A stretch of DNA of 58,410 nt, taken from contig NC_068992.1 in NCBI RefSeq assembly GCF_001194135.2, positions 58,925,384 through 58,983,793 of the forward strand. Reading direction: 5' to 3'. Within the stretch, counting starts at the first letter, position 1. Every line of letters begins with the position of its first letter. The notes under the pieces are model-generated. The model was not told where the DNA came from. It did no database searches and was given only the letters and a program-made list of their open reading frames with translations. This document shows, in pieces, positions 1-23,470 of the stretch. The stretch comes from Octopus bimaculoides (Eukaryota). The translations under genes and the position numbers were made by a program.

Positions 1-69
<69 letters not shown>
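1..69. repeat. (CA)n microsatellite
   Basis: Directly visible. Confidence 0.98.
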
Positions 70-70
<1 letters not shown>

Positions 71-2036: not shown

Positions 2037-2260
2037 GCTGGAGGCGGCGAGCTGGTAGAATCGTTGCAAGCCAGACAAAATTTTTAGCGGCATTTCGTCC
2101 GTCTATATGCATTGAGTTCAAATCCCGCTGAGGTCGACTTTGCTTTTAATCATTTCCGGATCGATAAAGTACCAGTTGATCAGTGGAGTCAATGTAATCC
2201 ACTCACAACCGCCCCAGAAATTGCTGGACTTGTGCTAAAATATGAAACCAATATAAGACT
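2037..2260 (+). mobile_element. tRNA-derived SINE family A, near full length
   Basis: A-box-like ggcgagctggtagaatcg, B-box-like gagttcaaatccc, body gtcgactttgc, tail cttgtgctaaaatatgaaacc. Confidence 0.85.
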
Positions 2261-3033
2261 ATTGCATAACTACTTTATGGTGTAGTACTTCTTCAGATAT
2301 TGAATGAAAATCCAGGAGTAACAAGAAGAGAAGGAAGAGAAGAAAGAAGACAAAAAGAAGATGAAAGAAGAGAGCTTGGAAATAACGCATGTGTGATAGG
2401 TTCACATGTTCGACATATTTTGTACGTACGTATAACAATATTGTAATATGGTTGCCATGTCTGTACGAAACAGTATATGTTCTTAGCTGAACTGAAAAGC
2501 CACATCGGCGCTGTTCATGTTTAAAAGAACAACCAAGTGATGTTATTACTTGAAATCGAGTTGCAGCCGTCTTGTAAAATATATAAACACATTCAATTTT
2601 TAAAAGCCTTAAATTTAAATCTTTAAAGTAAATTTTTATTTGCAGCATTAACAGAACACCAATTAGGTGACAGACGTTCTGCTTTTTTTTTTCTTTCTTT
2701 CAAAGTAAACACGTCAGTTTGTTTTGTTAGCGTTATAGGTTAACTAAATGGTTCTTTTAACTTCCCGTATTGTAAAAGACTATAACCAACAATCATATTT
2801 GCAAATATATAAAAAACTACACAAAATAAAATGCACAACTCTTATCGATATCGATTTCAATGATCAAAGTTTATAGGGAAATATGCCTCCTACAAATGCA
2901 TCAGAATATTAATTTAAGAGCAAACATTATTTTTAAACACCACTTAGTGAAATATGATAATCAAATGAATGAACCAAAACAAAAGAATGAAGGAAGAAAG
3001 AAAGTAATTAAAAAAACTAATAATAATTAAGAC

Positions 3034-3218
3034 GCAGGTAAGGGAATGTTAAGAATTTTGTTTTCGGGTTCAATCCCACTGCGCGGCACTTTGAATAAGA
3101 GATATCTTCTACTAGAGCCCAGCTCGATCAATGTCTTTTGTGGGAATTTGGTCGAAGGAAACTGTACAGAACCTCATTGTATGTGTGTGTACATACACAC
3201 ATACATACACACACATAA

Positions 3219-3254
<36 letters not shown>

Positions 3255-3470
3255 GGGCGCACGTGTGTCTGTGATTTCCCATCCCAGCATCGCTTGACAA
3301 ACGCTGTTGGTTTGTTTACATCACATATGACTATAACTATAACAATAAGCGGTTCACCAAAAGAGACGAAATAGAATAAATACCAAACTTTAAAAAATAA
3401 GTATTGGGGGAAATTTTTTCGATGTGTGGCTGAGTATTCCTAAGACGCATAAACTCAATAAGTAATCCTT
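3034..3470 (+). mobile_element. SINE family B with internal CA/TA microsatellite
   Basis: gggttcaatcccactgcgcggcac head; internal microsatellite; catcgcttgacaa...gcggttc...aaagagac 3' module. Confidence 0.8.
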
Positions 3471-3519
3471 TAGTTAAGTATTGAAATGCTATTTTTACCA
3501 ATATTAATGGAGTAAAATG

Positions 3520-3780
3520 TGGAGGCACGTGGCTCAGTGATTAGGGTGTTGGACTCGTGATCCTGAGATTGTTCTTTCGATTCTTCGGCCGGGTGATGCA
3601 TTGTGTAATTGAACAAAGCACTTCATTTTTCTCGTTGCATGCCGCTGTAGTCCACCCAGATGGCAAAAATGAGTAATCCCGCGACAGACCGGCGTCTGCC
3701 CGGTGGTAGGCGGCGGGAATTTATACGCTACAGAATCCAGAAGACTGGCCTTATGAGCCTATGGCTCGGGACAGACGTTT
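3520..3780 (+). mobile_element. tRNA-derived SINE family C (CORE/Meta-like body)
   Basis: tggctcagtgattaggg A-box-like; ttgaacaaagcacttcattt; related copies about 1255-1420, 10920-11020, 15050-15190 (+) and 32090-32300 (-). Confidence 0.7.
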
Positions 3781-3976
3781 GATTCTCTTTGAAGAGAGTA
3801 AAATATTTCTGCTGTTGGTACAAACACAGGGAAAGGGAGAGACAGAAGAGAAAAGGGAGGAAAGAGAAAGCGAAAGTACTAGGTAGAGAAGTGGAGGACG
3901 GGTTAGGAAAATGGATGGGAAATAGGACGAAGGGACAGAATTAAAATGAAAATATAAAAAGAGTAAGAGGATAGAT

Positions 3977-4022
<46 letters not shown>

Positions 4023-4059
4023 AAGAGAAATAAAAAGGGGGATAAATAAGTTTTAATCT

Positions 4060-4260
4060 TTCTATTAAAGGCACAAGGCCTGAAATTTTGTAGGAGGGGT
4101 AGGGGGCTAGTCGAATACATCGAACCCCAGCGATCGACAATGAGAAGATGAAAGTCAAAGTCCACCTCGGAGGAATTTGAACTCAGAACGTAAAGCCGGA
4201 AGAAATCTTGCTTCGCATTTTGTCCGACGTCCTAACAATTCTGCTTGATCACAGCCTTTT
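4060..4260 (-). mobile_element. SINE family A
   Basis: ggcacaaggcc...gaaagtcaaagtccacctcggaggaatttgaactcagaac. Confidence 0.8.
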
Positions 4261-4398
4261 AGAGTAGACATTAATGATATTGTGTAGCAACTCGGTGAAG
4301 AAAAACTGATTAGATGGGTTAAAATAGATAGATAGATAGATAGAAAGATAGATAGATAGATAAATAGATAGATAGATAGATAGATGAGTAAACGCGTT

Positions 4399-4456
<58 letters not shown>

Positions 4457-4869
4457 AAATGTGTAAGAATGAGAGACGAGGAGCACGTATGTTTTAAAGA
4501 AAAATCTTATCTGAAAAGAAGAGACAAAACTAACCACTATAGCAACAACAACAAGAGATAAACGGACAAACAGGAGCCCAACAATATCGAATTATACTCC
4601 GATGGGAATCTATGATATATTAGAGTATTGACCATCTTCCCCATCTGCCGTTGACTCTAATAATAAATTGTTTTAAAATGTTTTATTGGTGCAACCCAAC
4701 CAATTATCTCAATCAGATTGTCGTAATTTCATTTTTTAAAATACATTACCATCACTAAACTACACTTAATCGAATAAAGGAAAAGTGATAGGACAGAGAT
4801 TGCAGATGTTTCTACCATCACCTGGCGCCGAACAGAAGAATTAATCATCTTGGAGAGATTATTATTAAT

Positions 4870-4945
4870 ATTATTATTATTATTATTATTGCTTTGCACG
4901 TATTTCGGAACTTTATCCCACGACACAGCATCTCCCGTGTGCATT
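4870..4945 (-). mobile_element. Possible R4-like 3' tail remnant ending in (AAT)n
   Basis: Minus strand ...gtgtcgtgggataaagttccgaaatacgtgcaaagc(AAT)n resembles a retroposon terminus. Confidence 0.3.
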
Positions 4946-5869
4946 TTTACTTAGCTTTGTGAAGGAAATTTAGAAGACAAAGCCAGTAACAACAATAGCA
5001 ACAACAACTATAATGATGGTTTCAAATTTTAGCACAAGGCCAGCAATTTCGGGGGAGGTTGTAAGTGACCCCATTAATCAACTGGTACATTTTTTACCAT
5101 AAGTTCTTCTGGTTTGGGATTATTTCGAGGCTAAAACCAAGATCAACTACGCAGCAATCTTGTGGAGTTCTTAAAGGCCACCTAGCGTCGGATTAAAGCA
5201 TGAGTAAACTCGGCAGTTGCCCACGGACCTCACTGGTCCAGTGGACCAAATCTGATCTCTAAATGTTGTGGACTGCTGTCAATAAGTAAATGCTGTAGGG
5301 TCCAGCGCATTGATTTTTCAGAGGTTTATAATGCTACTTAGATGGCCCTCAATTTTGAATATTCAATTGTTCGATCAACTGAACTACCTGCTCATTGCAT
5401 TAGCCTGTAAGTGACTGAGTAAACCACAAACACAGCTACCCTTGATATAATTCTCAGGCGGAGTCAGCGAGACAGATTGTGCTCAGGCGAGACCTTTGAA
5501 TTCCAAGCTCTTTATGCCTGGCGGACTTTCACACAGTTTTAGTCTACGTGATTTCACGCATTGGGCTTAAACCAAGTCGAAGCAATGGTAAAGGATACTT
5601 AGTCTAAGTGCTTAGCAATGGGAACGGAAATGATACCTTACAATCGTGAAGCAAATTTCATAACCATTGAGCCATAACGAACAAAAGAACTATACTACAT
5701 TGCACAACATATTGCTAAAACTGCTTCCTTTGCTTATTGTCGTTCATCGAATTCAGTAATCTTTAATCTTTAACTTGTCTCAGTGTTTTGAGTCCCAGTA
5801 CAATTTTCCAAACCTGATATATATTTTATTGGTCTCTAGCTTACGAAGAAGTGAACAAACCAGCACCGG

Positions 5870-5968
5870 TTGTCGATCTCGGCAGAATTTGAACTCAGAA
5901 CGTAAAGACAGACGAAATACCGCTAAGCATTTCGCCCGGCGTGCAGACGTTTCTGCCAGCTCGCCGCT
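5870..5968 (-). mobile_element. SINE family A head fragment
   Basis: ggcagaatttgaactcagaacgtaaagac...ctgccagctcgccgc. Confidence 0.8.
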
Positions 5969-6074
5969 TTTGTTGTGCGTAATATTGTTTCTGTTATTGC
6001 TGTTGTGATAACCATACGAGTGTCGCAATTAATATTAATTGCTGTTATGTTGTTGCGAACAAATAAAAAGATTG

Positions 6075-6131
6075 CAATAACAACAACTACTACAACTACA
6101 ACTACTACTACTGCCGCCGCTGCTACTGCTG

Positions 6132-6186
<55 letters not shown>

Positions 6187-6215
6187 AATTACTACTACTA
6201 CTACATCAAAACAAT
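6075..6215. repeat. (CTA)/(CAA)/(CTG) compound trinucleotide repeat
   Basis: Directly visible. Confidence 0.95.
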
Positions 6216-6440
6216 AACTACAAAAACAACGACGACAGCTGCACTAAAATATGCTTGAAATATAATTAGACACCGATTGGTTACTAAGCAACGCAACAAT
6301 TTCAAGCTGTTATTCATTAATTTATCTATTTATTGAAATTCCATTTGCCGACCACAGCTATTCTCCCCTGTTAAATTAGTTTATAATATGCTACAATGGT
6401 CAAGTGGTGCAGTTTATCATCTAATACGGCATTATATAGA

Positions 6441-6536
<96 letters not shown>

Positions 6537-6959
6537 TGTGTGTGTGTTTATATCTTATGTTCCTGCAGTCAAGTGTTACTATTTATCATGTAGTATAGCA
6601 TTATATATGTATATATTATTGTAATTATCCTTATAGAATGCTGTAATTGTGAAGTGCATCAGTTTATCAATTCCAAGAATACTAATTTCTTTGTTATTGA
6701 ATTTTTAACCGCGGGTGAACTTGGATCGAGAATAACTGTCATCAAAATCGTTGAATCTGTGTCTGTTCCATCAATATTTTTATTCTCTTAGACATATGGT
6801 ATCTACAACTACAACGACATTATCTAATGTATCCTTTTTTTTTTTGTAGTATAATATTTTTTATCTTTTGACTTCGACTTGATTCAATAATTGGAACCAT
6901 GCTGGTTCATCTCATTCAAGTGTTGGCTACTTTCATGGTCTGATACTTATTCTATCGAA

Positions 6960-7620
6960 TCTTTCGTCGAACCGCTACGTTATGAGGATGCAAACAAACT
7001 AGCAACTGTTGTCAACCGACTATAGAGGTAAAACACACACATACATACGAACGTCTTCCACGCAGTTTCCATCTACTAAATTCATTCACAAGGCATTGGT
7101 CTAATCGGGGCCATCGTAGACAGCATTTGCCAAAGATGCGCGCAGTGGGATGGAACCCGAAACCAAGTGACAGCAAAACAAGCTTCTTAACCACACGGCT
7201 ATGCCAGCACCTGGATACGATTTCAGACGAATCGACGCAAAAACTTGGACAATTATTTCTACTACAGACTCCCGCCGACCAAGGTCTTGTGAGTGGATGT
7301 GGTGGACGGAAAATGTGTGGAAGTCCGTCAGGCCACGTATGAGAATGTGTATGTGTGTACGTGTATGCATGTATGCATCCATGTGTGAATGTGTGTGTAT
7401 GCATGTGTATAATTGTGCTTGTCTCCGCACCATCTGAAACTCGGTACAACTTTTTTACGTCGCTGCATTCTAGCGGTTCGATAAAAAGAGACCGATAGAA
7501 TAAGTACCAGACTTCAAAAAAGGAATAAGTACTGAGGTCGATTCGTTTCACCAAATCCTTGCAGGTGGTGCTTCAGCATGGACGCATTCCAATGATTGGC
7601 GCAAATAAAGAATAACAAAA
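6960..7620. mobile_element. Back-to-back SINE family B copies (minus about 7010-7210, plus about 7270-7620)
   Basis: ggatggaacccgaaacc...gcttcttaaccacac on minus; plus copy ends ggtggtgcttcagcatgg. Confidence 0.7.
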
Positions 7621-7836
7621 TATGTCTGTTAGTTTTACATATGAATAAATTACGTCTCTAAATTATTTCACTTTTTCCTTCACAGTTTTATGTTCGGATT
7701 GCGGGGATATTCCATAGCATAAAATTACATTCAGAGATTTTTTTTAAAAATCATAAAATTGTTTCGTGACAAACTAATTTTGTGAAACAGCTGCTCTACG
7801 GTTTACGCTATTTCGGCTGAAAACCGAGACTTTAGC

Positions 7837-8002
7837 CAGGTATGGGCAATATATACAGAGAAGCGGGTCGTCATTCGCGGGGAAGCGCACAAAACGGTTC
7901 GTTATTAGGGGGCCGCACTACTAAAAGCTTTCAAGGTAATTTTTCGTTAGATATGTCTGTGGACCGCATGCGACCTGTAGGCAGCAATTTGCTTATATAA
8001 TT
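7837..8002. mobile_element. Degenerate hAT-derived MITE
   Basis: caggtatgggcaa terminus, ggaccgcatgcgacc subterminal motif, possible 8-bp TSD actttagc/tctttaga. Confidence 0.45.
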
Positions 8003-8049
8003 TCTTTAGACGTTCCGTCTTTCATATATTGTGCCCCTCTTTGAAAAGT

Positions 8050-8430
8050 TCTTCATGCTTGTAGCTGCATTGAAGAAAGATATATTTACGGTTATCGAAG
8101 CCTCGTATATTTAACACCACCAACCCGAACGTGAATAATTTTATCGAAATCCACTCTGTTGCAAACATTTAACCTAGATCTACGGCCTATGGATCATTTC
8201 CTCGATTCCTCCCACTACTTCAGAGTTCCTACAAAGGACCGTGGACCTTACCGTCCTCATTTGATTAATATAAATAATGAAGATGGATTGCTTTCTTGAG
8301 TTGTATACAATCTGCCTATTTACCTATTGATTTATGCATTTGGAGGAGATGGATATCACATGACTCATGGACTATGAAGAGAAGATATTGTGACCAGAGA
8401 CAACGTGATATACAGGAATAACTTCCGTGT
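8050..8430 (+). mobile_element. Penelope-like element fragment (RT remnant with upstream hammerhead-like motif)
   Basis: NINNEDGLL and YAFGGDGYHMTHGTM resemble PLE RT motifs (TNI...EG; YF.F.G..Y.Q.HGTAMG); ttgaagaa-agata..tatc-gaag upstream. Confidence 0.45.
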
Positions 8431-8529
8431 CCATCGACATAACATGTATAATTTATTATGTGTACAGATAATATGCTACATATTGGAGTAACATACTATA
8501 TGAATATATAAAGGGTTATATGTCAGAAT

Positions 8530-8713
8530 GAGTGTAGGCATGTCTGTGTGGCGTTGAAGTTTGCTTTGTAAGCAACGTTGTTTCAGGTTCAGTCCCACTG
8601 CGCGGCAGTTTGGGCAAGTGTCTTCTACTATATTCCTGAGACGACACATTCTTTTCTTTATGAGTGAATTTGATAGACAGAAACTGAGCGAAAGCCCGTC
8701 ATATGTGTGTGTT

Positions 8714-8756
<43 letters not shown>

Positions 8757-8865
8757 CTGATTGTGTTTGGTTTGTTTACCTTGCTGTAAATTAGAGGATC
8801 GGCACAAGAGGCCAATAAACTAAGTGCCAAATTAAATAATAATAATAATAACAATAATAATAATG

Positions 8866-8918
<53 letters not shown>

Positions 8919-9000
8919 TTCAGAGGTAGATTTATTCGACTAAACACTTCAAGGCGGTGCCCCAACATGGTCGCAATCCAATAACTGAAACACGAAAATG
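8530..9000 (+). mobile_element. SINE family B with (TG)n and (AAT)n expansions
   Basis: ggttcagtcccactgcgcggcagtttgggcaagtgtcttctac; tail ggcggtgccccaacatggtcgc. Confidence 0.8.
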
Positions 9001-9329
9001 ATAACCGATCTATTCAACATCAGAGCAACTTATTTATTTCATTGGTCATATTGGTGGTGGGTTTATCTACAGACATAATAGGAACGCCAGTGTTGTATTG
9101 TTACTATGAATTAGCATGATCAAAGCCGTCCCATCCATGATCATCCGAGCGTTCTGTCGGGGATTGCTTATCTGTGATTACGTGAGTCACTCTACCGAGC
9201 ATGTTAGTGTGTGTGCGCTTTTTGTTTTGTGATTTGACTGCTGCTTCTGGGACTTTGAACAGCCCAGCTGTAGCTTTCCTTCTCTGCTCCGCTGTGAATG
9301 TTGTAGATGTAGTTGGTATAGAGTTTGCG

Positions 9330-9975
9330 GTGGTGGAGATGGTGGTGGTGGTGGTGAGGTTATGGGTAATGTAGAAAAAAGTTGTAGTATTAACAGCTGT
9401 AGTGTTAATGATGGCAATGCTGGTAGTAGTGGTGGTAGTAGTGGTGGTAGTAGTGGTGGTAGTGGTGGTGGTGGTAGTGGTGGTAGTAGTGGTGGTGGTA
9501 GTGGTGGTAGTAGTGGTGGTAGTAGTGGTGGTAGTAGTGGTGGTAGTGGTGGTGGTNNNNNNNNNNNNNNNNNNNNNNCTGGTAGTAGTGGTGGTAGTAG
9601 TGGTGGTAGTAGTGGTGGTAGTGGTGGTGGTGGTAGTGGTTGTAGTAGTGGTGGTAGTGGTGGTGGTAGTAGTGGTGGTAGTAGTGGTGGTAGTGGTGGT
9701 GGTAGTAGTGGTGGTAGTAGTGGTGGTAGTAGTGGTGGTAGTGGTGGTAGTAGTGGTGGTAGTGGTGGTGGTGGTGGTGCCGGTGCTGGTACTGGTCGTG
9801 GTGAGCGTTATCGTCGTGATAATTATAGTGGTGGTCATGGTCATGATAGAGATGCTGGTCGTGATGATGGCCGTCGTGTTAGTTGTCGTGGTGTCATCGG
9901 TCTTGACGGCGACGACGGCATCATCATTCACGATGGTGGGGGCGATGATTTTCGTGTTGGTGGTGGTGGTGGTGG
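9330..9975. repeat. Compound (GGT)/(AGT) trinucleotide satellite
   Basis: ggtagtagtggt units with a short N gap. Confidence 0.95.
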
Positions 9976-10691
9976 CGTTGGTGTTAAAGGTCACTACAGA
10001 TATGTGTCGTTGTGTATAGAGGCTATCGTTAATGATACGTAAAGGCCAGAGTGTAGAAACGCTTCTTCTAATTAACATTTCTTTTAAAACATCAGGAAAA
10101 CACGCCTACTGGTAGCAGTGGCTCCACCTCTGTCATGTGACAAGGAACGGCCTTATACCAATACCAGTACCAATCGCGAAACACAGAATCGTATAACACT
10201 TCAGGCTGCAACTGGCCTGCATCCTTTTGGAGTGAATTGTTGATATCTCAATAAAAAATAAAATCAATATTCCAATGTGTTCAATAAAGACAAGAATTCA
10301 GTCGATTTCGATAAAAGGTTTACCAAATCAATCATTCACAGCAATCATTCTTAATAAGCCTCCGATACAGGTAGTAACTTCAGGTAATCCATTTAATTAG
10401 ATTCAATGTTACTAGTTAATAAAATCATATAATTTCATGCAGTTATTGAATTCAGAAGATTTGCAGTCTTTACTGAGCTCTGAAGATCTCATTAAAAGAA
10501 GCTCCAGGTGAACCCAGCACTTCAATTTCAAATGATGGTGTGAACGAGATTACTTCACCCTTGTGCTTTCGGTTACCTTTGAGAAAAATGCGGAGGTAAA
10601 TATAATATCATTGTACTCTCTTGTAACTGCTGCTTGTAACCATGCAGGACCCAAACATAATTACAATTATCCGATATTTATAGCCAGTTAT

Positions 10692-10905
10692 ATTCTTTTC
10701 TACTCTAGGTATAAGGCCGGAAACTTTTGGGGAAGGGGGCCAGTCGATTAGATCGACCCAAATACGCAACTGGTGCTTAATTTATTGACCCGAAAGGATT
10801 AAAGGCAAAGTCGACCTCGGCGGAATTTGAACTCAGAACATAGGGATGGGCGAAATACCGCTAAGGCCGGCGTGCTAACGATTCTGCCAGCTGGCCGCCT
10901 TAGTC
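10692..10905 (-). mobile_element. SINE family A, full length
   Basis: Close match to copies at 30672 and 50104. Confidence 0.88.
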
Positions 10906-11289
10906 AATTATATTATTAATGTGAGGACTCATGGTCTAGTGGTTAGGATTTTACTCTCACGATCGCAAGATCGTAGTTTCGCTTCTTGAACCGGGCAGTG
11001 CGTTGTGTTCTTGCGTTCTCCAAGAAAGAAAACAAGACACAATGCGAAAATTTTAATATAAATCGTCGTGTAAAGTCTCGATTAGAGTTGATAAAGGGCA
11101 AAACAACTACATTTTAATTTCCGTTGCTTGGATCTTCGAAAAAACCATGAACAACACAACACAACATTTCGAAATATGAAGCAAATATGTCTAAGAAATC
11201 AATAATTGCAGAACAAGGCAGGGAAGACCACCGATAAGAATCGATCGCGTGTCGCAGTTTTGGTTTCCTGGATGCTTAGGTCTTCTTTA

Positions 11290-11760
11290 GGAATGGTTGT
11301 GTGCTTCAGAGCTTGATTTGCAACCGTTTAGTTCTGGGTTCAATCACACACCCTGGCACCTTAAGCAAGTATATTTTAGTATAGACCCGGACGGGTCAAT
11401 GCCTTATGAGTAAACTGGTTGATGGATATATTATGGCAGCCTGTTGTATATCAAAAAGATGTGTTAAAATACTATTCCACATATATAAAAACAGCCATAC
11501 CAACAATCCAGCATACCTCCATCATCTGCTGCTCCATGCGTATCATTATGGTTTCGAAACCTGGGTAGTACCATATATGCCACATATATGTGTTTGTGCA
11601 TACGCGCGTGCTTGTGTGTATGTGTGTCTGTGTTTGTCTCCCATCATTGCTTGATAATTGGAATTGGTTTGTTTACGTCTCCCTATCTTATCATTCGGTA
11701 AAGGAAACCGGCAGAACAACTGAAGGTCTTTAAAAAGAAGTACTGGTTTAGTCAATTTAT
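11290..11760 (+). mobile_element. SINE family B, diverged
   Basis: gggttcaatcacac...tttgtctcccatcattgcttgataa. Confidence 0.65.
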
Positions 11761-12109
11761 CGTAAAGACAGACGAAATGCCGCCATGCATTCTATTCGGC
11801 CTGCTAATGGTTCTTTCAGCTCACCGCCTTTAATACAAGAAGTAATATTGCGATTGCGAAGAACGAATCATTGGATTCTATATTTTTCTTTTTGTCCCAT
11901 ATTTATTGCGCTAGCGATGTTTAAATCTCTTCTAGGCCTTCCTTGCCCTTCCCAGTCATTGAGCTGAGGTCATACTGGAGCACCGCCTTGAAAGTTTTAG
12001 TCAAACAAATCCAAGAACTGAGAACGCAAAGCAAAGTAAGGCAATCAGAATTATTGTCTGGATCGAAGACGATCCATTTCTGGACGACTGATGACGCTGG
12101 TTTAATAAG

Positions 12110-12800
12110 AGGTTTATTATACTGTTAAATGCTTCAGCAAATTTGTAAACAAGCATGTCTCCAACAGGATGGAGGAGCAAGTGACTGATGGCTATAAGGA
12201 ACAGAAATCGGATCGAAGAATCAGTTGACTGTGCATTTATCTCGTTATCTACTGTGTTTATTTCATAATTATTCTGTTGGCATTCACATGCCATTATATT
12301 AACTATTGCAGAGTGACGAAATTTCATATTGTATTCTCATTTTCCCTTTCATAATTCTAATCCGAATCCATCATCGGTAGAGAAACTAAGCACTGTACAT
12401 GTATAAAGACATGCAGCTTATTAAGGCTCTAAGCTGTCGCTCAACATGCTGGAGATAGCAGCCAAATCTCCCTCAAATCTGACTCTAGAATTAAAAAAAA
12501 AATGAAGGTGAAAACGGACAATGCAGTCCGGAATATGCAATTTGACGTGATAATAATGGGTGGAATATATTGTTTTTGAAGCAGTTGACAAGGTACAAAA
12601 TAACAACAAAAACATCGACATATTCTTAGTTCAAATGCAGCTGTGGTCAACTAAATAAATACTTGGCATATAACTACCCATCCCATGATCTAACTAAAAT
12701 CTTGCTGCCATGAAGCAATGTGAAGCGTCAGTATACTACCCTATAAGGTTACGGTCACACAGGACGCTACCCTGATGAAATCTCTTTAATATCTTATTAG
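12110..12800 (-). mobile_element. Decayed RTE-clade LINE reverse transcriptase fragment
   Basis: Motif remnants FCTLSTASKTI (F.DL.KAFDTV), NSRVRFEGDL and IRFLFLIAISHLLLHPVGDMLVYKFAEAF (IR.LLFADD...LVN.FAEA); frameshifted. Confidence 0.65.
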
Positions 12801-13049
12801 ACCGAAAGCTGCAAACGGTTAAGTCACTGGCACTGTAACCTGACATAGACGACAGTAGAGCAACAGTCTAACTCTCTCTTTCCTTCTTTTCTCTCTCTCT
12901 CCCCCTCTCTTTCTCTATATTTCTCTCTCTGTCTCTCCTACGGTCCACTTTCTATGTCTCTCTCCAAGATATCGCAATCCACAGCGAGATGTATCCCTCT
13001 ACTAGCCTTTTCCTTTGTCTTTTTGTTTGGTACCATTCTAATTCAAACC

Positions 13050-13290
13050 AGTTTTCTACCTCCCTTCATCGCCTTCATGGCTCCCGCGATGTCACCCTCC
13101 AGCTCCTTCTCTACCTACCTCACCCTCACAACCCTTGTCATAGAATCCATTCCATGGTTCTTTTCGTCTATCCATTATCTTTTGTTGTGGTTAAATGATC
13201 AAGCTATACAACTCCTTCCACCACAAGATCCAGTCCTCATTGTGGTGCGAAGCCTTGTGTGCCCCAATGATGCTGAGATCTATGCCAGCA
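13050..13290 (-). mobile_element. RTE-clade LINE C-terminal fragment
   Basis: DHLTTTKDNG*TKRTMEWIL*QGL*G*GR*RRSWR resembles GH..R..DNRWTKR..EW.P..GKR.RGR.R.RW. Confidence 0.55.
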
Positions 13291-13474
13291 AAGTGTAAGT
13301 TCCTGCTAGAATCTTTTATGATGTGATGGACAGTTCAAAGGACAGAGATAAGACTAATAAGGACCATCTCCTCCTAGAAGTGAAAAATGGTTGGCATATT
13401 GGTTGAAGCGATTTTTAAAAATACACGGAGCTTCATTCATTCAAGTCAAATATTGATGCATACAGTCTAATATG

Positions 13475-13612
13475 CATTAGCAGAGCTAGGATGGGGCTGT
13501 TGGGGCAGTCCACTCCGGGCGGCATTTTTGGATCTGCTGTAGGTAATGTGATCTTCGGAGGTGGCAAACGGAAGGGCCGCCCTGGGCGGGACACATTCCA
13601 GCTACGCTAGTG
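13475..13612. mobile_element. hAT-type MITE with 8-bp TSD
   Basis: Imperfect TIRs cattagcagagctagg / cactagcgtagctgga (reverse complement); flanks CTAATATG (13467-13474) and CTAGTATG (13613-13620), 7/8 identical. Confidence 0.7.
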
Positions 13613-15289
13613 CTAGTATGGTCCATTTTAAGGATGACCCATGCAGCAGCATAGCGTTGGCTGAGATGACCACCGAGGGTAGCCATGTTAGCATGGGTCT
13701 TCTCTGTAGAAGATATGTTCCGTTTAAAGAAGGCGAATCTTCGAAATTCTTACGTCACAGAGAATGTTACTGTAGAAAAACAAATCTGTAATACGAGGCA
13801 TATTATTTTAATAGTGTTTGAAATATAAGACTGGTGTGCAAGAAAAAGAAAAGCAAAGTTACTTAAGTTCGATGACAATTCAGAGCCAACAAGACCCAGG
13901 GGAAGGAAAAACAACACAGAGTCGACACAGTGGATAAACGTGATCGATGTCCTGTGCTCCGAAGGCAGTAACAGGTTTAAGAAATATACAACCACTTATT
14001 TGTTTTTGCTGTTTCTTTAGGTTTACCACTAACTTCTGTGCTTCTATTTATCTCTAAATTTCTAATTCTTTCAACATAATATTTCCGAGTAAAATATGCT
14101 GACGGAAAAGACTACTGCACCTTTTTACCAACGTTTATAGTGTTTAATTTGTAGTTGTAAATTCGGGTCCTCTAATGAGGCTTGATACGTTTGTGAGATA
14201 CTATAAAACAGTGAACATTAAAGAAGAAAGTTCGTGTATTTCTATCGCCGTGTGGGATCTGTGGTCTGAATGTAATTAGGGTTTTCAAAATGGAACTAGT
14301 CGCTGTAATTAGGTCTTCTTTAACTGTCTGTAATTAGGACTTCTTTAAATGTCTAGAATACAACCGTTTGTCACCAATGTCCCCAATTTCCTACTTGTAT
14401 ACTCCTCCGGAAGAAATTGTATTAATTACAAGGAATTCTAAAACTTATTACCCCAGATTCAGGTTTGTGTAACTATGGAAAAATTATAAATTCTATATGG
14501 CTCAGACGACTTCATTATATATTGGTGCCAGAGGAATATACAGCACACCGCATCTCTATACAATTATGTATATGACATTCTCTAGCCGTAGATGAATCTT
14601 AAACATACAAATCTATGATTAAAGTGCTCCATTTGTGACCATCCAATCTTTAAGAGGTATGTAGGACAATATCATTTACTGGCTGTTTCTTAGTTTAATA
14701 CATTAAGGTGTAATTTGAGGAAGACAGAGGATTATTCCTAGATTTTAAACCGACCAAGTTTGTGTGTGTGTGTATGTGTAAGTGAATAAGTGAACGTCCG
14801 CATATAGTTATAGATCTATTAAAGAAAGATATGACATTTTATAGTGTGTATATGTACGTATGTGTTTGTGTATTTTGTGTGTATATGCGCGGGTGCAAGT
14901 AACTTTGCTTGGCCATGGTCTCTCATCTCCTTCAAAGACGTTTCAGGGGCGCCATCATGACAAATAAGTGTCTTGGACACTTTTAGGCCTGGTGGAGTTC
15001 ATCTCTCTGAAGGCGTGTTGAGAAGTTGATGATAGGCTGTTGAACGATCGCTCGATCATGGCCTCGATTCCCGGCCCACGCGGTGCGTCGTGTTTTTGAG
15101 CAAAACACTTCATTATACGTTGCTCCAGTTCACTCAGCTGTAAATGAGTAACTCTATGACGGACTGGCGTCTCGTACCGGGGTGATGTTGTTCCACTTAT
15201 AAAAATGGAAACTGGTTAACTTGAGACAGTAACGTCCAACAGTTGATGATGTTGATGATGATGATGAGTTCATCATTCTGAAGTTCTAA

Positions 15290-15510
15290 CTAGGGCGAAT
15301 TTCTTCCAGAAGTTAAAACAGACAAAAAGAATTGAAAGAATGAAAATCGACACCAACACAAGGCGAGTACTTTATTTATCGACTCCAAAATGATGGGTTA
15401 CGATGTCGACATTGGTGTGATTAGAACTCAGAATGTAGAGAGCCGAAGCGATTACCACAAGGCAATGCTCCGACGAGCTAACGCTTCTGCCAATTGGCAT
15501 CATTTACATA
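15290..15510 (-). mobile_element. SINE family A, diverged
   Basis: gtcgac...tagaactcagaatgtagagagc...ttctgccaatt. Confidence 0.65.
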
Positions 15511-15623
15511 AAAATGCATCTATCTTTATGTGCGTATAGAAATAAGAATGTAAAAATATGTATCTATATTATCTATTTGTATGCGCATTGAGAAATAAGT
15601 ACATGTGTAAGTAAACATAAGTA

Positions 15624-15654
<31 letters not shown>

Positions 15655-15921
15655 NNNNNNNNNNNNNNNNNNNNNNNNNNNNNNNNNNNNNNNNNNNNNN
15701 NNNNNNNNNNNNNNNNNNNNNNNNNNNNNNNNNNNNNNNNNNNNNNNNNNNNNNNNNNNNNNNNNNNNNNNNNNNNNNNNNNNNNNNNNNNNNNNNNNNN
15801 NNNNNNNNNNNNNNNNNNNNNNNNNNNNNNNNNNNNNNNNNNNNNNNNNNNNNNNNNNNNNNNNNNNNNNNNNNNNNNNNNNNNNNNNNNNNNNNNNNNN
15901 NNNNNNNNNNNNNNNNNNNNN

Positions 15922-15981
<60 letters not shown>

Positions 15982-16329
15982 TGTGTGTGTGAAGAAATTT
16001 GGTCAAACTATATTAAGATTCAGCTATTTTAAAATCTTTTACGAAGGAGAATAGGTAATGCCCATAAACCTTCACGGAATCTCCAAGGGTCTTTGTGGGG
16101 AAAACGTCACCCTCATATGGGAGACAGGGCCGCATAATTGTAACAGAATTGGGTACATTGAAGACAACCAGGGTGTCAGGGTAGTGCGTTGAAGGAGAAG
16201 TTGCTTTAACTTTGCCAATCAAATATACCAGGGCAGGATTCGAACTCACAAAGCAATGAGCCTGAACAGATACCGCTGATATCAAGTAGGGCTTTCTCAC
16301 AACTGCGCCAATCTTATCTTTTACATTTT

Positions 16330-16709
16330 ACTTGCTTTGGTGATTAGACTGCGACCATACTGGGGTACCACCTTGGAAGGTTTAGTCCCAAAAATTGACC
16401 AGTTACGAAGACATAAACAAACTGACATCGGTTCTTAAGTGGTGGTGTGGACAAACACAAACACATAAATACGCGCATATACATACACACATATATGTAT
16501 ACATATATATATATATATATANNNNNNNNNNNNNNNNNNNNNNNNNNNNNNNNNNNNNNNNNNNNNNNNNNNNNNNNNNNNNNNNNNNNNNNNNNNNNNN
16601 NNNNNNNNNNNNNNNNNNNNNNNNNNNNNNNNNNNNNNNNNNNNNNNNNNNNNNNNNNNNNNNNNNNNNNNNNNNNNNNNNNNNNNNNNNNNNNNNNNNN
16701 NNNNNNNNN

Positions 16710-16743
<34 letters not shown>

Positions 16744-16910
16744 TATCTAGCACGGGATTTCACAGTTTCCACGAACCAAAATAACTTATAAAGCACTGGT
16801 CGGCTCGGAGCTATAGTAGAAGGTACTTGTCCAAGATCCTACAAAGTGGGACTGAACACGAAGCCAGGTAGTTGCAAACCAAGCTTCTTAACCACGCAGC
16901 CATGCCTGGT
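16330..16910 (-). mobile_element. SINE family B spanning a gap in its internal microsatellite
   Basis: gactgcgaccatactggggtaccacc (tail, reverse complement); ggtggtgtggacaaacacaaac; gtgggactgaacac head. Confidence 0.75.
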
Positions 16911-17079
16911 ATTTATATTTTGTGAACTCCCGAATGAATGGAAGGAAAAGTTCGTCTGGACGTTATTTGAACTAAGAGTGAAGAGTTTCAGAACAAATAG
17001 CACAAACCATTCTTTCCGATGCCCAAACCACGACACCGTATTGCAGCCTGGAGCTCCACACAAAATATTAGATTCAAAT

Positions 17080-17490
17080 TTTGGCAAAAGGCTAACAATT
17101 TTAAAGTAGGGGGTAGTCGAGAACTGGGGCTTATTTTATCGATTCCGAGACGATGAGACGCAAAATCGACGTTGTCGGAGTTTGAAACCCGAGCATAAAG
17201 CCAGATGAAATGTAGCTAAGCATCTCGTCCAACGTGCTAACCATTCTGCCGGATCGCCGCCTTATCTCCACATGAAATAATATGTACTAGAGGCGCAAGG
17301 AATGAAATTCGGGGGATGGGATAGTCGATTACATCGATCTTCAGTGCTCAAATGATAATTATCTTATTAACCCCGAAAGGATGAAAGGCAAAGTTGACCT
17401 CGGCGGAATTTGAACTCAGAACGTGCAAACAGACGAAACGGCACAAAGTATTTGCCCGGCATACTAACGTTTCTGCTGGGTTGGCGCCTT
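17080..17490 (-). mobile_element. Two tandem SINE family A copies
   Basis: Both end in ...gccttatctccacat; head-to-tail. Confidence 0.8.
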
Positions 17491-17967
17491 ATCTCCACAT
17501 AAAATACGGCTTTGACATGTATAGAAGTACAGACCAGATTACAATGCACAACAAAGAACAATTAAGGTTTATGCATGAGAGACGAACAGACGGACGGATG
17601 GATGGATGGATGGATGGATGAATGTTTGTGTATATGTATGCATGTCAGGGCCCTCTTATTGCTATTGTAAGCCAGTGTAACCTGTTGCATGTCCGGGCCG
17701 TCGGCGACTAAAATACCAGCGTTACTAACCCTGCTTGGTAAAGAGCATTGTTTTTTCCTGGATGTTGTGCAGGAAGAAAACCAAAACCTATAATAGGGCG
17801 AATAAGTATACTAGAACCATTAAAAAGCTGAGAGTGAGGCATACCTTAGTCTTCGTTTAATATCTCCCAAGGAGAAGGAAATTCTAACATAACACAGCCT
17901 CATTGCGAAACCGGAGGTCTTGTTTGTTTCTGGGCTACTTGGCATTGTAGGTGAGAGGCTTAGCGGT

Positions 17968-17987
17968 GTTATAACAGCTGTTATAAC
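17968..17987. repeat. Perfect 20-bp palindrome
   Basis: gttataacagctgttataac. Confidence 0.95.
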
Positions 17988-18206
17988 TTAACATTTCAGC
18001 ACGGATATTGCTGAGAGTTATTGCCTTAACAAATGGTATAAGGATTTCTGAGTGACGCTCATAATCGTCTACGAGTTGACAGCTACTATGTATGTATGTT
18101 TGGATGGATGGATGGATGGGTGTGTATCTATGTATATATGTATGAATGCATGTATGTATGTATGTATGTATGCATGGATTGATCGATGGATGGATGGATG
18201 TGTATG

Positions 18207-18261
<55 letters not shown>

Positions 18262-19180
18262 ATGAATGTATGCATGCATAGATTGATAGAGTGATGGATG
18301 AATGTGTATATGTATGTATGTATGTATGTATAAATATGTATGTATGTATGTATGTATGCCTGTCAGTCGATCTATCTATAAGTATGTATGTATGTATGTA
18401 GGTATGTATGCATGCACAATGAGTGTTTATTCATAAAAACAAATCCTACAGATACGAGATATTGAACTCAATACTGAAAGACGTATAGCCTATTGTATTC
18501 TACGTTCTGTTAAGCGTTAAGACGTTTGCAATGGAGTCAAGTCGGTGACGAGGTCGCAGTTGGTGCGACGAAAATTTTGACATCAAATAAAAGATGTTTA
18601 AGTGAAGTCAAGAGACTCTGGGTGTTTCATAATGGCAAAAATGTATCTTCTACACTACAATCGATTTAAGCATTTGATCCTGTTTCAGTTCTAACTCAAT
18701 CTGATGACAGATCATGATCGGTTGAATTTTCAAACGACAGAACTAACTCGGTGAACTAACCATTAAATAAATAGTATATATATATATATATATATATACA
18801 TATATTATATGCTTCTTTGTATGTGTGAGCGAGAGAGAAAAAAAGTATGTATGCATGAATGCGCATGTGTTTGTACGCGTGTCACGTATGTAAAGACTGC
18901 TAAATTTACAAGTTGGAAGGAAAATGTACTCAGTTTTAAAGTAAAATACATTTATTTCTTGTACTGCCTACATAATCTGCCGACATTACACTCACTGTAT
19001 CGAAAATATCCCCGTTCAACAGGCAAATTAGAATAGTACACTTACACTTTCACGCACACACTAATACACACACAAAGACACATATTCACACACACACGCA
19101 CCCGCACACACGTACACACGCACACATTCTCTCTCTCACACACGAATCACATGCTAAGCGGACATAGACACATACATACA

Positions 19181-19250
<70 letters not shown>

Positions 19251-19679
19251 AACATATAGGGAATGTGAGAGATATATAGACAAATTGATGAGATGTATAT
19301 AATACATACATTTATATATGTAGGCATAGGTATACATACATATGCATATACACAAAAGCACACATATTCATACAAACACAGGTATGTATGTATGTATGTA
19401 TATATTACAAATGAAAGGCTGTGACGTAAAAAATTGCTTGAACAGTTTCGAAGTCACCCTTAACTTTACATTTTTCTAAAAGCAAAGTATTGACCATTTA
19501 ATTTACAACGATGCTCACGACATCTCCGCTTCCGCCTGCCTCGCACACCAATAGATGCATGCTACATATATAAAGGTATTTGAATATATATAGATATATG
19601 TATTACATTGTCAAGAGGATATAACATAATTATTAACATTCTAGTCGGCATCATATGAAAAGTTGTTATAAACATTTTA

Positions 19680-19723
<44 letters not shown>

Positions 19724-20193
19724 ACGTATGCGTATGTATGTGCATATGTATAATTTTATGTATATGGATGTGTATATATATATTCATTTATATAAATATA
19801 TATGCATGCATGTATAGATACATAGCGTATGTGTGTGTGCGTGTTTGTGAGTGGACATATATATATATATATGTGTGCATATATATATATATATATATAN
19901 NNNNNNNNNNNNNNNNNNNNNNNNNNNNNNNNNNNNNNNNNNNNNNNNNNNNNNNNNNNNNNNNNNNNNNNNNNNNNNNNNNNNNNNNNNNNNNNNNNNN
20001 NNNNNNNNNNNNNNNNNNNNNNNNNNNNNNNNNNNNNNNNNNNNNNNNNNNNNNNNNNNNNNNNNNNNNNNNNNNNNNNNNNNNNNNNNNNNNNNNNNNN
20101 NNNNNNNNNNNNNNNNNNNNNNNNNNNNNNNNNNNNNNNNNNNNNNNNNNNNNNNNNNNNNNNNNNNNNNNNNNNNNNNNNNNNNNNNNNNNN

Positions 20194-20228
<35 letters not shown>

Positions 20229-20405
20229 ATATATGTATATGTATATGTGCGTATATATGCAAGCATGTACGTTTCCATACATACATACATACATTTGTGA
20301 GTGCTGCTTGTGGTTGTGCGTGACTGTGTACATGTACAATACAAGTATTTCTGTAAAGAAAACTTTAAAAAAAAAAAATAATAATAATAAACATCAAAGA
20401 CTTAC

Positions 20406-20507
20406 TAGTTCACTTTTGGGTAAAACTTCGGAGAGGGCCATAGCTTCGGCAAACATATTGGCACACACCACTACGAGAAAGAAACAAGCAAATGTGTGTT
20501 GACGCAT
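20406..20507 (-). CDS. First coding exon (34 codons) of a secreted or membrane protein with N-terminal signal peptide; gene unidentified
   Basis: Minus strand reads TGA TCC AAG ATG CGT CAA...GAA CTA|GTAAGT = MRQHTFACFFLVVVCANMFAEAMALSEVLPKSEL. In-frame stop just upstream, n/h/c signal-peptide layout with A-M-A cleavage motif, consensus phase-0 donor, promoter motifs about 360 bp upstream. Confidence 0.72.
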
Positions 20508-20864
20508 CTTGGATCACCAGCAATAAAACAACTGCGTTGATTTCGGAAACACCGTAAACGGGAGAGATTGAAGAATTCCGCGAGAGAACTTGGAACACGC
20601 AGAAGTATAATGATTATTCAGTCACAACGACTAGAAGAATAACCAATCGAGGATCTATAACCGTCCTTTATAGATTGAGAGCTGGAGAGAGAGAGAGTGA
20701 GAGAAAGTAACAAACGATATGCGTGTGTTTGTGCGTGTGTCTGTCGGACACCAGAAGTCTTTTATACAGAATGAATTTGTTTGTGTTTTTCGTTTTGTTT
20801 TGTTTGGTCTAGTAATAGATTTTCATAAGAGAATTGGCAGTTTTCTTCTTTGTCCTCTTCGAGA

Positions 20865-20970
20865 GCTTTGAAGGAAAGAGTTTTAAACGCTGTCTTTATA
20901 AAGCAGTATAAAGATGGGCGAGTACAAGAGAGTTTTGTATACGCGTGTGCTCTCTTCCCCGATTGGCCGA
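20865..20970 (-). promoter_or_regulatory. Core promoter: CCAAT box, TATA box, Inr-like site
   Basis: Minus strand: GGCCAATCGG (ATTGG on + at 20962-20966), TATAAAG at 20900-20894, TCAAAG with A at 20869, 31 nt from the TATA T; locally CpG-rich unique sequence. Confidence 0.55.
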
Positions 20971-21324
20971 CTTGCCGCGCCTTTTTCGGATCGATAAACC
21001 AATTATATGCAGCTGCATATTGCGTGGTAGTTGCTCCTAACTCTAATAGCTGCGCTTTCGTTGTTGTTTTCTTGCTGAGTTTTGCAACGCCCTGATTGAT
21101 CTTACAGGCATGTAAGTAGACAGGTGGATGGATGGATGGATGGATGGATGGATGGATGAACGGATGGATCGTCAGTCGGAACAAGAACTTACGAAACAAG
21201 CCTACGCTCTATGTAGCGTTGTTGCTGATTTCCTGCGAGTAATTCTTCTTCAAAAAAAAAAAAAAAGAAATATGATAAATGATCACATTATTTTGGTGGG
21301 TTTTCTTTATTGTTTGTTTTTAAA

Positions 21325-22737: not shown

Positions 22738-23470
22738 AGTTCAAATTTTGGCGCAAGGCCAGCAATCCTATGAGAGGGGTAAGTCAATTACGCCGACCCC
22801 AATGCTCAGCTGGTGCTTATTTTATCGACCCTGAAAGGATGAAAGGCAAAGTCGACCTCAGCGGAATTTGAACTCAGAACTTAATAACGGAAGAAACACC
22901 GCAAAGAATTTTGCCCGGCATGCTAACGATTCTACCAGTTCACAAATTCTTTGGAATTTTAGCTCAAGCCCAGCAAATTTAGTGGGATTGGAGTTTGTCG
23001 ATTACATCTACCCAGTATTTGAGTGGTAATCAATTTTATTTAAGGATGAAAAGCAAAGATGATATCAGTAGGAATTGAACTCAGAATGTAAAGAACTGGA
23101 AAAAATGCTGCTAAATATATTGTCTGACGCGCTAACGTTTCCTTCAGCTGGCTACTTTGCTCAAATTTTGGCACAAGGCCAGTTATTTTAGGTGGAAGAG
23201 AGGGTTTGTCAATCATACTGACTTCAATATTTGACTACGTTCTGAGTTCAAATTCCGCCGACGTAGACTTTGCCTTTCATCCTTTCGGAGTCGATAAATT
23301 AAGTACCAGTTACACACTTGGGTCGATGTAATTGACTTAATCCCTTTGTCTGTCCTTGTTTGTCAAATCTATGTTTAGAAATCAATATTTCACTGCTATT
23401 TATTTTATCGACCCCGAAAGAATGAAAGACAAAGTTGAATCTACGGAATTTGTACTGAGAATATTTATTC
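22738..23470. mobile_element. Cluster of about 5 SINE family A copies (mostly minus, one plus at 23235-23370)
   Basis: Repeated ttttggc(g/a)caagg...gaactcagaa units. Confidence 0.8.

What the first reader, a model, noticed from the sequence alone, without database searches (positions are those of the whole stretch)
20406..20970. Hidden first exon of a secreted protein with a complete core promoter
The ORF track misses it because the frame stops four codons into the intron. Seen on the minus strand: in-frame TGA, then ATG and 34 codons MRQHTFACFFLVVVCANMFAEAMA|LSEVLPKSEL ending at GTAAGT; upstream GGCCAATCGG, TATAAAG and a TCAAAG Inr-like site with TATA-to-start spacing of 31 nt. Established: the n/h/c layout with A-X-A is a signal peptide. 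Inferred: a secreted ligand, neuropeptide precursor or receptor with a first intron >20 kb. I do not recognise the protein.
Basis: partly seen in the sequence, partly recalled or inferred. Interest (0 to 1): 0.7.

Follow-up and report, generated by a model that had tools for sequence, protein, structure and literature searches.

The report
First exon of octopus allatostatin-C gene

Summary

The 34 residues are identical to residues 1-34 of a 90-aa Octopus protein (CAI9731308.1 / UniRef100_A0AA36BC24). That protein continues SEISRERQ…KR-AVITACYFQAVSCY.

A same-species RNA-seq contig (L004) matches window 20846-20407 with no mismatch. It then jumps to sequence absent from the window, exactly at the predicted donor. 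In O. vulgaris the gene has two coding exons (102 + 171 bp) and one phase-0 intron of about 24 kb. By colinearity, exon 2 lies about 1 kb beyond window position 1.

A 2026 preprint names this protein the allatostatin C precursor and shows that the mature peptide activates two receptors.

The TATA box and the TCAAA start site are conserved in O. vulgaris and in Argonauta hians. The transcript contig starts 23 nt downstream of the predicted start site.

Verdict: observation confirmed, interpretation supported, gene already known. The conserved core promoter is the only small addition.

The parts
20406..20507 (-). Coding part of exon 1 of the allatostatin C (AstC) precursor gene: codons 1-34, covering the signal peptide and the first 10-12 residues of the propeptide. 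It ends in phase 0.
   Evidence: Translation. 34/34 identical to P0002 (Octopus vulgaris CAI9731308.1; UniRef100 cluster with 3 Octopus members). tblastn places only residues 1-34 in the window. 98% nucleotide identity to O. vulgaris.
20400..20405 (-). Splice donor GTAAGT of the single phase-0 intron.
   Evidence: mRNA contigs L004, L001 and L002 leave the genomic sequence exactly here. The O. vulgaris genome has CTG|GTAAGT, and its exon 2 is preceded by TTGCAG.
1..20405 (-). The part of the AstC intron inside the window, including N gaps at 9557-78, 15655-921, 16522-709 and 19900-20193. Exon 2 is not in the window.
   Evidence: Colinear with O. vulgaris L003 at about 82-90% identity; L003 31790-33137 matches window 1379-35. 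Exon 2 starts at L003 34137, about 1 kb beyond window position 1. tblastn finds no match for residues 35-90.
20508..20846 (-). 5'UTR shown by transcript evidence (339 nt).
   Evidence: L004 nt 24-364 match window 20846-20508 with 0 mismatches and one 2-nt (CT)n length difference. L004 nt 1-23 are Illumina adapter.
20847..20869 (-). Inferred 5' extension of the UTR up to the predicted start site (the A of TCAAAG at 20869).
   Evidence: Inference only: 31 nt from the TATA box, and TCAAA is conserved in O. vulgaris and in Argonauta at 32 nt. No transcript contig covers these 23 nt.
20894..20900 (-). TATA box, TATAAAG.
   Evidence: Identical in O. vulgaris. TATAAGG in Argonauta hians, inside a conserved block GCTTTATAA(A/G)GA.
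20889..21029 (-). Proximal promoter block conserved between Octopus and Argonauta. It holds TACCACGCAATA (21029-18), ATTGGTTTAT (21003-20994), AAAAAGGCGCGGCAA (20986-72), CTCGCCCA (20922-15) and the TATA box.
   Evidence: Local alignment score 50, against a maximum of 32 in 200 shuffles. 95.4% identity to O. vulgaris over -110..-1, against 82% in the intron and 87% far upstream.
20959..20968 (-).
   Evidence: Present and identical in O. vulgaris, but GGTTGAATGA in Argonauta. Its function is not supported by deep conservation.
20809..20826 (-). Five-codon upstream ORF (ATGAAAATCTATTACTAG), holding the only ATG in the 5'UTR.
   Evidence: Conserved in O. vulgaris, not alignable in Argonauta.
20661..20673 (-). 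Second TATA-like element, CTATAAAGGACGG, inside the 5'UTR. A perfect YYANWYY (TTATTCT, A at 20640) lies 32 nt downstream.
   Evidence: Invariant in the window, O. vulgaris, L001, L002 and L004. TATATAAAGGACAGG is present 277 nt before the ATG in Argonauta. Its role is unknown: an alternative promoter or a UTR element.

Best explanation
Window 20406-20869 (minus strand) is exon 1 of the allatostatin C (AstC) neuropeptide precursor gene of an Octopus species. The species is not O. vulgaris. It is probably O. bimaculoides, which is an inference.

A TATA-box promoter (TATAAAG at 20900) directs transcription from about 20869. The roughly 360-nt leader carries one 5-codon uORF. Translation starts at 20507.

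A single phase-0 intron follows: at least 20.4 kb here and 24,034 nt in O. vulgaris. It joins exon 1 to exon 2, which lies about 1 kb beyond the low end of the window.

Exon 2 encodes the conserved proregion (LANRLLHRLLDVAYETFR…), a KR processing site and the C-terminal 14-mer AVITACYFQAVSCY. After signal-peptide removal and prohormone-convertase cleavage at KR, the two cysteines form a disulfide loop. The cyclic peptide acts on two somatostatin/opioid-related GPCRs.

Shown here: exon identity, splice site, gene structure, transcription, and conservation of the promoter. Taken from the literature: signal-peptide prediction, receptor activation and tissue distribution. Inferred: the exact transcription start site and the species.
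For: -: a full HMMER scan of 1.84 billion representatives with the 34-aa peptide gives one hit (P0001, E 3e-13, 33/34 identical, residues 1-34 to 1-34).
- cluster member P0002 (CAI9731308.1, O. vulgaris; UniRef100_A0AA36BC24, n=3 Octopus) is 34/34 identical over the exon, then continues with sequence not in the window.
- the tblastn match stops exactly at residue 34.
- three RNA-seq contigs (L001, L002, L004) carry the uninterrupted 90-codon ORF. L004 matches window 20846-20407 with 0 mismatches and diverges at the donor.
- the O. vulgaris genome shows CTG|GTAAGT … TTGCAG|AGC, a phase-0 intron of 24,034 nt.
- preprint 10.64898/2026.02.18.706622 identifies this precursor as OvAstC. It reports two exons (102 + 171 bp), a 22-aa signal peptide, a KR site, and that AVITACYFQAVSCY activates OvAstCR1 and OvAstCR2 with broad tissue expression. 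It lists O. bimaculoides model Ocbimv22019504m.
- a profile search finds a mollusc-wide family ending in CYFQA[VI][ST]CY. The Elysia member is named 'Allatostatin C' by UniRef.
- Promoter: the TATA box and TCAAA are conserved to Argonauta with 31-32 nt spacing. Identity to O. vulgaris falls from CDS 98% to core promoter 95%, UTR 93%, upstream 87-90% and intron 82%.
- the cDNA end of the transcript contig lies at 20846, upstream of the second TATA element and 23 nt below the predicted start.
Against: - Exon 2, and therefore the mature peptide, is not in the window. The link rests on transcripts and on the orthologous locus.
- The window has A at 20406 (CTA|GT) where the same-species mRNA contig and all relatives have G (CTG|GT). 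The assembled allele therefore has a slightly weaker donor, or the base is an assembly error.
- The transcription start is not mapped. The contig end at 20846 could be a true start or a library artefact. A second conserved TATA-like element at 20673 could be an alternative promoter.
- The word-index protein search found nothing. That was a false negative of the tool, not evidence against the gene.
- Pfam has no model for the family.
Confidence: 0.97

Rival explanations
1. Chance pseudo-exon: an ATG, a hydrophobic stretch and a GTAAGT that arose at random in AT-rich non-coding DNA and are never spliced.
For:: such a combination appears in about 6% of window-sized Markov simulations, so genome-wide there would be thousands. 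TATAAA occurs 86 times in the window.
Against: Identical N-terminus in an annotated 90-aa protein. Three spliced transcript contigs use the donor. 98% conservation to O. vulgaris, and peptide conservation in Argonauta.
Confidence: 0.01
2. The exon is real, but the main promoter is the proximal TATAAAGGACGG element (20673-20661) with a start near 20640. The distal TATA (20900) would then be minor or non-functional.
For: The element is invariant in all Octopus sequences, and a near-identical copy sits in the Argonauta leader. A perfect YYANWYY lies 32 nt downstream.
Against: L004 (same species) extends to 20846. L001 and L002 (a related species) extend to positions equivalent to 20780 and 20715. 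All of these lie upstream of the proximal element, so transcription starts further up in at least these libraries. The distal TATA/TCAAA pair is also conserved in Argonauta.
Confidence: 0.15
3. The gene is a molluscan paralogue distinct from true allatostatin C, a separate 'Q-type' cyclic peptide, and has been mis-named AstC.
For: The third loop residue is Q where the preprint reports N for other protostomes. All molluscan homologues retrieved here carry Q.
Against: The loop length (six residues), the flanking CYF…SC[YF] residues, the C-terminal position after KR and the single phase-0 intron all match ASTC. The peptide activates receptors that cluster with AstC/somatostatin receptors. UniRef names the Elysia member Allatostatin C.
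Confidence: 0.07

Closest known systems
Octopus vulgaris allatostatin C precursor (OvAstC; OctVul6B022881P1 / CAI9731308.1), preprint 10.64898/2026.02.18.706622
   Same: The exon-1 peptide is 34/34 identical. The donor position and phase are the same. The gene has the same two-exon structure with a very long intron. The locus is colinear over more than 30 kb at about 85% identity.
   Different: The species is different: non-coding DNA is about 82-90% identical. The window has a synonymous A at the last exon base. The intron here is probably about 21.4 kb, against 24,034 nt. The preprint does not analyse the promoter or the UTR.
Insect/arthropod allatostatin C (PISCF-type, e.g. Manduca and Drosophila AstC)
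   Same: A small precursor with a signal peptide and a single C-terminal peptide after a dibasic site. The peptide has a disulfide loop of six residues with CYF…SC[FY] (preprint alignment; own knowledge of the PISCF motif).
   Different: Q replaces N at loop position 3. [quoted passage not shown] The proregion is not alignable.
Vertebrate somatostatin/cortistatin precursors
   Same: [quoted passage not shown]
   Different: There is no sequence similarity in the peptide beyond the cysteine loop. PMC9048919 treats ASTC and somatostatin-related peptides as two distinct families.

Membership tests
Allatostatin C (ASTC) neuropeptide precursor | N-terminal signal peptide | tested here: met
   n/h/c layout: R2, then a 10-residue uncharged window with mean Kyte-Doolittle hydropathy 2.84, then A-E-A and A-M-A. 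SignalP 6.0 on the identical O. vulgaris sequence gives 22 residues (preprint). No dedicated predictor was available here.
Allatostatin C (ASTC) neuropeptide precursor | Single mature peptide at the extreme C-terminus, preceded by a dibasic (KR) cleavage site | tested here: met
   …IQRKR|AVITACYFQAVSCY* in P0002 and in the same-species mRNA contig L004. This part is encoded in exon 2, outside the window.
Allatostatin C (ASTC) neuropeptide precursor | Two cysteines six residues apart, within a C-Y-F-[N/Q]-x-[I/V]-[S/T]-C-[F/Y] motif | tested here: met
   C82 and C89 are invariant, and CYFQA is invariant across 6 aligned homologues and 10 further molluscan proteins. Q stands where other phyla have N.
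Allatostatin C (ASTC) neuropeptide precursor | [quoted passage not shown] | tested here: met
   The intron falls after codon 34 in phase 0 and is the only intron. The rule is stated in PMC9048919.
Allatostatin C (ASTC) neuropeptide precursor | Sequence homology to proteins named allatostatin C | tested here: met
   The profile of A3 finds the Elysia chlorotica protein that UniRef names 'Allatostatin C' at E 5.6e-16, along with a mollusc-wide family. Pfam has no model.
Allatostatin C (ASTC) neuropeptide precursor | The mature peptide activates AstC-type GPCRs | not testable with these tools
   Reported for the identical peptide: EC50 about 2.8e-8 M on OvAstCR1, with the cyclic form more potent than the linear form (preprint).
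TATA-box / initiator core promoter (RNA polymerase II) | TATA box about 28-33 nt upstream of the start site | tested here: met
   TATAAAG lies at 20900 and the A of TCA at 20869, 31 nt apart. The spacing is 32 nt in Argonauta, and the box is conserved in both relatives.
TATA-box / initiator core promoter (RNA polymerase II) | Initiator consensus YYANWYY at the start site | tested here: inconclusive
   TCAAAGC matches 6 of 7 positions. TCAAA is conserved in O. vulgaris and Argonauta.
TATA-box / initiator core promoter (RNA polymerase II) | Capped transcript 5' ends map to the predicted start | tested here: inconclusive
   The only 5' information is the adapter-to-cDNA junction of contig L004 at 20846, 23 nt downstream of 20869. 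This is compatible with the prediction but is not a cap-mapping experiment.
TATA-box / initiator core promoter (RNA polymerase II) | Functional CCAAT box upstream | tested here: inconclusive
   GGCCAATCGG is conserved in O. vulgaris but not in Argonauta. An inverted ATTGG at 21003-20999 is conserved in all three.

The most novel reading that the evidence does not exclude
The roughly 140-bp block at 21029-20889 and the second TATAAAGGAC(G/A)G element in the leader, both conserved between Octopus and Argonauta, could form a compact, deeply conserved cis-regulatory module, possibly with two alternative start sites. Such a module might drive the broad neural, immune and digestive expression of AstC in octopods. 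The 5-codon uORF might add translational control. Separately, the Q-type loop CYFQA[VI][ST]CY is shared by gastropods and bivalves, so it is a pan-molluscan state rather than a cephalopod novelty.
Probability: 0.3. Interest if true: 0.2.

Novelty: already known. Interest (0 to 1): 0.12.

Why it matters
The result shows that reading raw sequence alone can correctly pick out a 102-nt signal-peptide exon, its donor and its TATA promoter in a 58-kb stretch with no other coding signal.

Biologically, it places the first exon and promoter of the allatostatin C gene in this assembly. That neuropeptide system has been proposed to modulate feeding, immunity and nociception in cephalopods.

The gene, its structure and its ligand-receptor pairing are already public. 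Only the promoter conservation and a few small corrections are new.

Tried and rejected
It reported no candidate. This was a false negative: the full HMMER scan found the protein, and its cluster representative shares more than 20 five-residue words with the query. Negatives from that tool on very short queries should not be trusted.
- Exact look-ups of the 37-aa read-through ORF and of the 145-aa ORF at 20762-21199 found nothing on record. The 145-aa ORF overlaps the promoter and UTR and is spurious.
- Rfam and tRNA scans of the window found nothing.
- CpG content: window 20401-21000 is at about the 95th percentile of the window, but about ten other 600-nt windows score as high. This is not diagnostic.
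- Self-BLAST: the exon and promoter are unique in the window, so they are not part of an interspersed repeat.
- I prepared stop-free segments of the downstream minus strand for a Pfam scan, to hunt for exon 2. I dropped this once the transcript showed exon 2 lies outside the window.
- Pfam on the full precursor matched no family.
- A literature search for the Pinctada peptide string gave no hit.

Full report
**Observation.** On the minus strand the window reads TGA (20516-14), ATG (20507), then 34 codons MRQHTFACFFLVVVCANMFAEAMALSEVLPKSEL ending at 20406. GTAAGT follows (20405-00), and a stop falls four codons into the read-through. Upstream lie GGCCAATCGG (20968-59), TATAAAG (20900-894) and TCAAAG (20871-66). 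The A of TCA is at 20869, 31 nt from the first T of the TATA box.

**How much chance would give.** The window is a gapped eukaryotic draft: 13 N runs, dense microsatellites and no long genuine ORF.
- A deliberately simple scan for "ATG + signal-peptide-like ORF + GTRAGT before the stop" finds 10 signal-peptide-like ORFs. Only this one has a consensus donor.
- Order-3 Markov simulations of the same size give 0.07 such sites, and 6% of simulations have at least one. Genome-wide, thousands of such sites would arise by chance, so the sequence pattern alone was not decisive.
- TATAAA occurs 86 times in the window. With an Inr-like site at 28-34 nt and a CCAAT/ATTGG box 30-120 nt upstream, it occurs 3 times.
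- The 362-nt putative leader has one ATG, against a window mean of 7.1. Only 2.3% of windows that long have one or fewer.
- The region is unique within the window and only mildly CpG-rich.

**Identification.** The word-index protein search found nothing. A full HMMER scan of 1.84 billion representative proteins with the 34 residues gave exactly one hit: P0001, 90 aa, E 3e-13, 33/34 identical, aligned residue 1-34 to residue 1-34.
- Its cluster contains P0002. This is CAI9731308.1, "Hypothetical predicted protein [Octopus vulgaris]", and UniRef100_A0AA36BC24, "n=3 Tax=Octopus".
- The first 34 residues of P0002 are identical to the window peptide. It then continues SEISRERQLANRLLHRLLDVAYETFRDYGGTEHELKEIQRKRAVITACYFQAVSCY.
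- tblastn of the 90-aa protein against the window matches residues 1-34 only, and the match stops exactly at the predicted donor.

**Transcripts and gene structure.** Exact look-ups returned three short contigs from public sequencing runs that carry the uninterrupted 90-codon ORF, plus the O. vulgaris genomic locus L003.
- L004 (1,199 nt) matches window 20846-20407 with no mismatch and one 2-nt (CT)n length difference. It then continues with sequence absent from the window. It comes from the same species and is spliced at the predicted donor.
- L001 and L002, from a related species (S26T in the peptide), match window 20780-20407 and 20715-20407 at 90-91% identity and splice at the same point.
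- In O. vulgaris the junctions read CTG|GTAAGT … TTGCAG|AGC. The coding exons are 102 and 171 nt, and the single phase-0 intron is 24,034 nt (L003 10103-34136).
- The window is colinear with L003 along the whole intron. L003 31790-33137 matches window 1379-35, which puts exon 2 about 1 kb beyond window coordinate 1.
- The Argonauta hians orthologue (P0004, L005) has the same exon 1 length and donor, and spans 9,785 nt from start codon to stop.

**What the protein is.** A full-text search for the C-terminal string found one paper, the bioRxiv preprint 10.64898/2026.02.18.706622. It reports the following:
- The O. vulgaris protein (OctVul6B022881P1) is the allatostatin C precursor.
- It has a 22-residue signal peptide by SignalP 6.0, a KR site and one 14-residue peptide, AVITACYFQAVSCY.
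- The gene has two exons (102 + 171 bp) and one long intron.
- Expression is broad across tissues.
- The cyclised peptide activates two receptors, OvAstCR1 and OvAstCR2.
- An O. bimaculoides model, Ocbimv22019504m, is listed.

[quoted passage not shown] A profile built from six homologues retrieves a mollusc-wide family from bivalves and gastropods. The Elysia member is named "Allatostatin C" by UniRef. All fetched members end in CYFQA[VI][ST]CY. Pfam has no model for the family.

**Promoter.** Identity between the window and O. vulgaris forms a gradient.

| Region | Identity to O. vulgaris |
|---|---|
| CDS of exon 1 | 98% |
| Core promoter (-110..-1) | 95.4% |
| 5'UTR | 93-94% |
| Upstream | 87-90% |
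| Intron | 82% |

- GGCCAATCGG, TATAAAG and TCAAAG are all identical in O. vulgaris.
- Against Argonauta, the block 21029-20889 aligns with score 50, against a maximum of 32 in 200 shuffles.
- That block keeps TACCACGCAATA, ATTGGTTTAT, AAAAAGGCGCGGCAA, CTCGCCCA and GCTTTATAA(A/G)GA. A TCAAA lies 32 nt after the TATA box.
- The first 23 nt of L004 are Illumina adapter, so its cDNA begins at 20846. That is 23 nt downstream of the predicted start and upstream of a second TATA-like element at 20673-61.
- These data fit a TATA-directed start near 20869 but do not map it.

**Verdict.** The feature is exon 1 and the promoter of a known, annotated and recently characterised gene, so its novelty is nil and its interest is low. 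The promoter conservation and the notes below are modest additions. The species of the window is not given. About 85% non-coding identity to O. vulgaris, an identical protein shared by three Octopus species, and the gapped short-read style of the assembly suggest O. bimaculoides, but this is an inference.

Noticed in passing
window 20406 (minus strand, last base of exon 1): The window has A (codon CTA) where the same-species mRNA contig L004, contigs L001 and L002, and the O. vulgaris and Argonauta genomes all have G (CTG). The change is synonymous but sits at donor position -1. It is either a SNP or an assembly error.
   Followed up: partly
window 20661-20673 and 20636-20642 (minus strand): A second TATA-like element, CTATAAAGGACGG, lies inside the 5'UTR, with a perfect YYANWYY 32 nt downstream. 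It is invariant in all Octopus sequences, and TATATAAAGGACAGG is present in the Argonauta leader. It could be an alternative promoter or a UTR element.
   Followed up: partly
window 20809-20826 (minus strand): The only upstream ATG in the leader opens a 5-codon uORF (MKIYY*). It is conserved in O. vulgaris but not alignable in Argonauta.
   Followed up: partly
window about 20685-20700 (minus strand), in the 5'UTR: The (CT)n microsatellite in the leader differs by 2 nt between the window and the same-species transcript L004, and by more in O. vulgaris.
   Followed up: no
proteins P0006, P0008, P0011, P0013, P0016, P0019, P0023, P0031, P0039: Bivalve and gastropod homologues all carry Q at loop position 3 (CYFQA[VI][ST]CY). 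The preprint text says Q is found only in cephalopods and N elsewhere. Either molluscs in general have Q, or there are two paralogues.
   Followed up: partly
L003 10103-34136 (O. vulgaris OX597825.1): I compute the intron as 24,034 nt (a gene span of 24,307 nt less 273 nt of coding exons). The preprint prints 24,304 bp, which is probably a digit transposition or the gene span.
   Followed up: yes
proteins P0003 and P0005: The O. vulgaris annotation also carries a 73-aa isoform (CAI9731309.1) that starts at Met18 and so lacks most of the signal peptide. It is probably an annotation artefact. A 73-aa product from other sequencing-run contigs starts at the equivalent Met.
   Followed up: no
window 23236-23378, 45364-45578, 30724-30888, 50150-50319, 10742-10902, 22780-22941: Short interspersed repeats of about 140-210 bp occur several times in the window and many times in the O. 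vulgaris locus, at about 80-90% identity. They are SINE-like elements. Translated motifs such as SEFKF(R/C)R and RRHLPK recur.
   Followed up: no
tool behaviour: The word-index homology search reported that no candidate shares three 5-residue words with the query. Yet the cluster representative P0001 shares more than 20 consecutive words with the 34-aa query. The short or X-padded query evidently defeated the index.
   Followed up: yes
window 9421-9803: A long, imperfect 12-nt/3-nt repeat (TGGTAGTAGTGG)n interrupted by an N gap produces the longest 'ORFs' in the window: poly-Thr, poly-Gly/Ser and poly-Val. It lies inside the AstC intron and is not coding.
   Followed up: no
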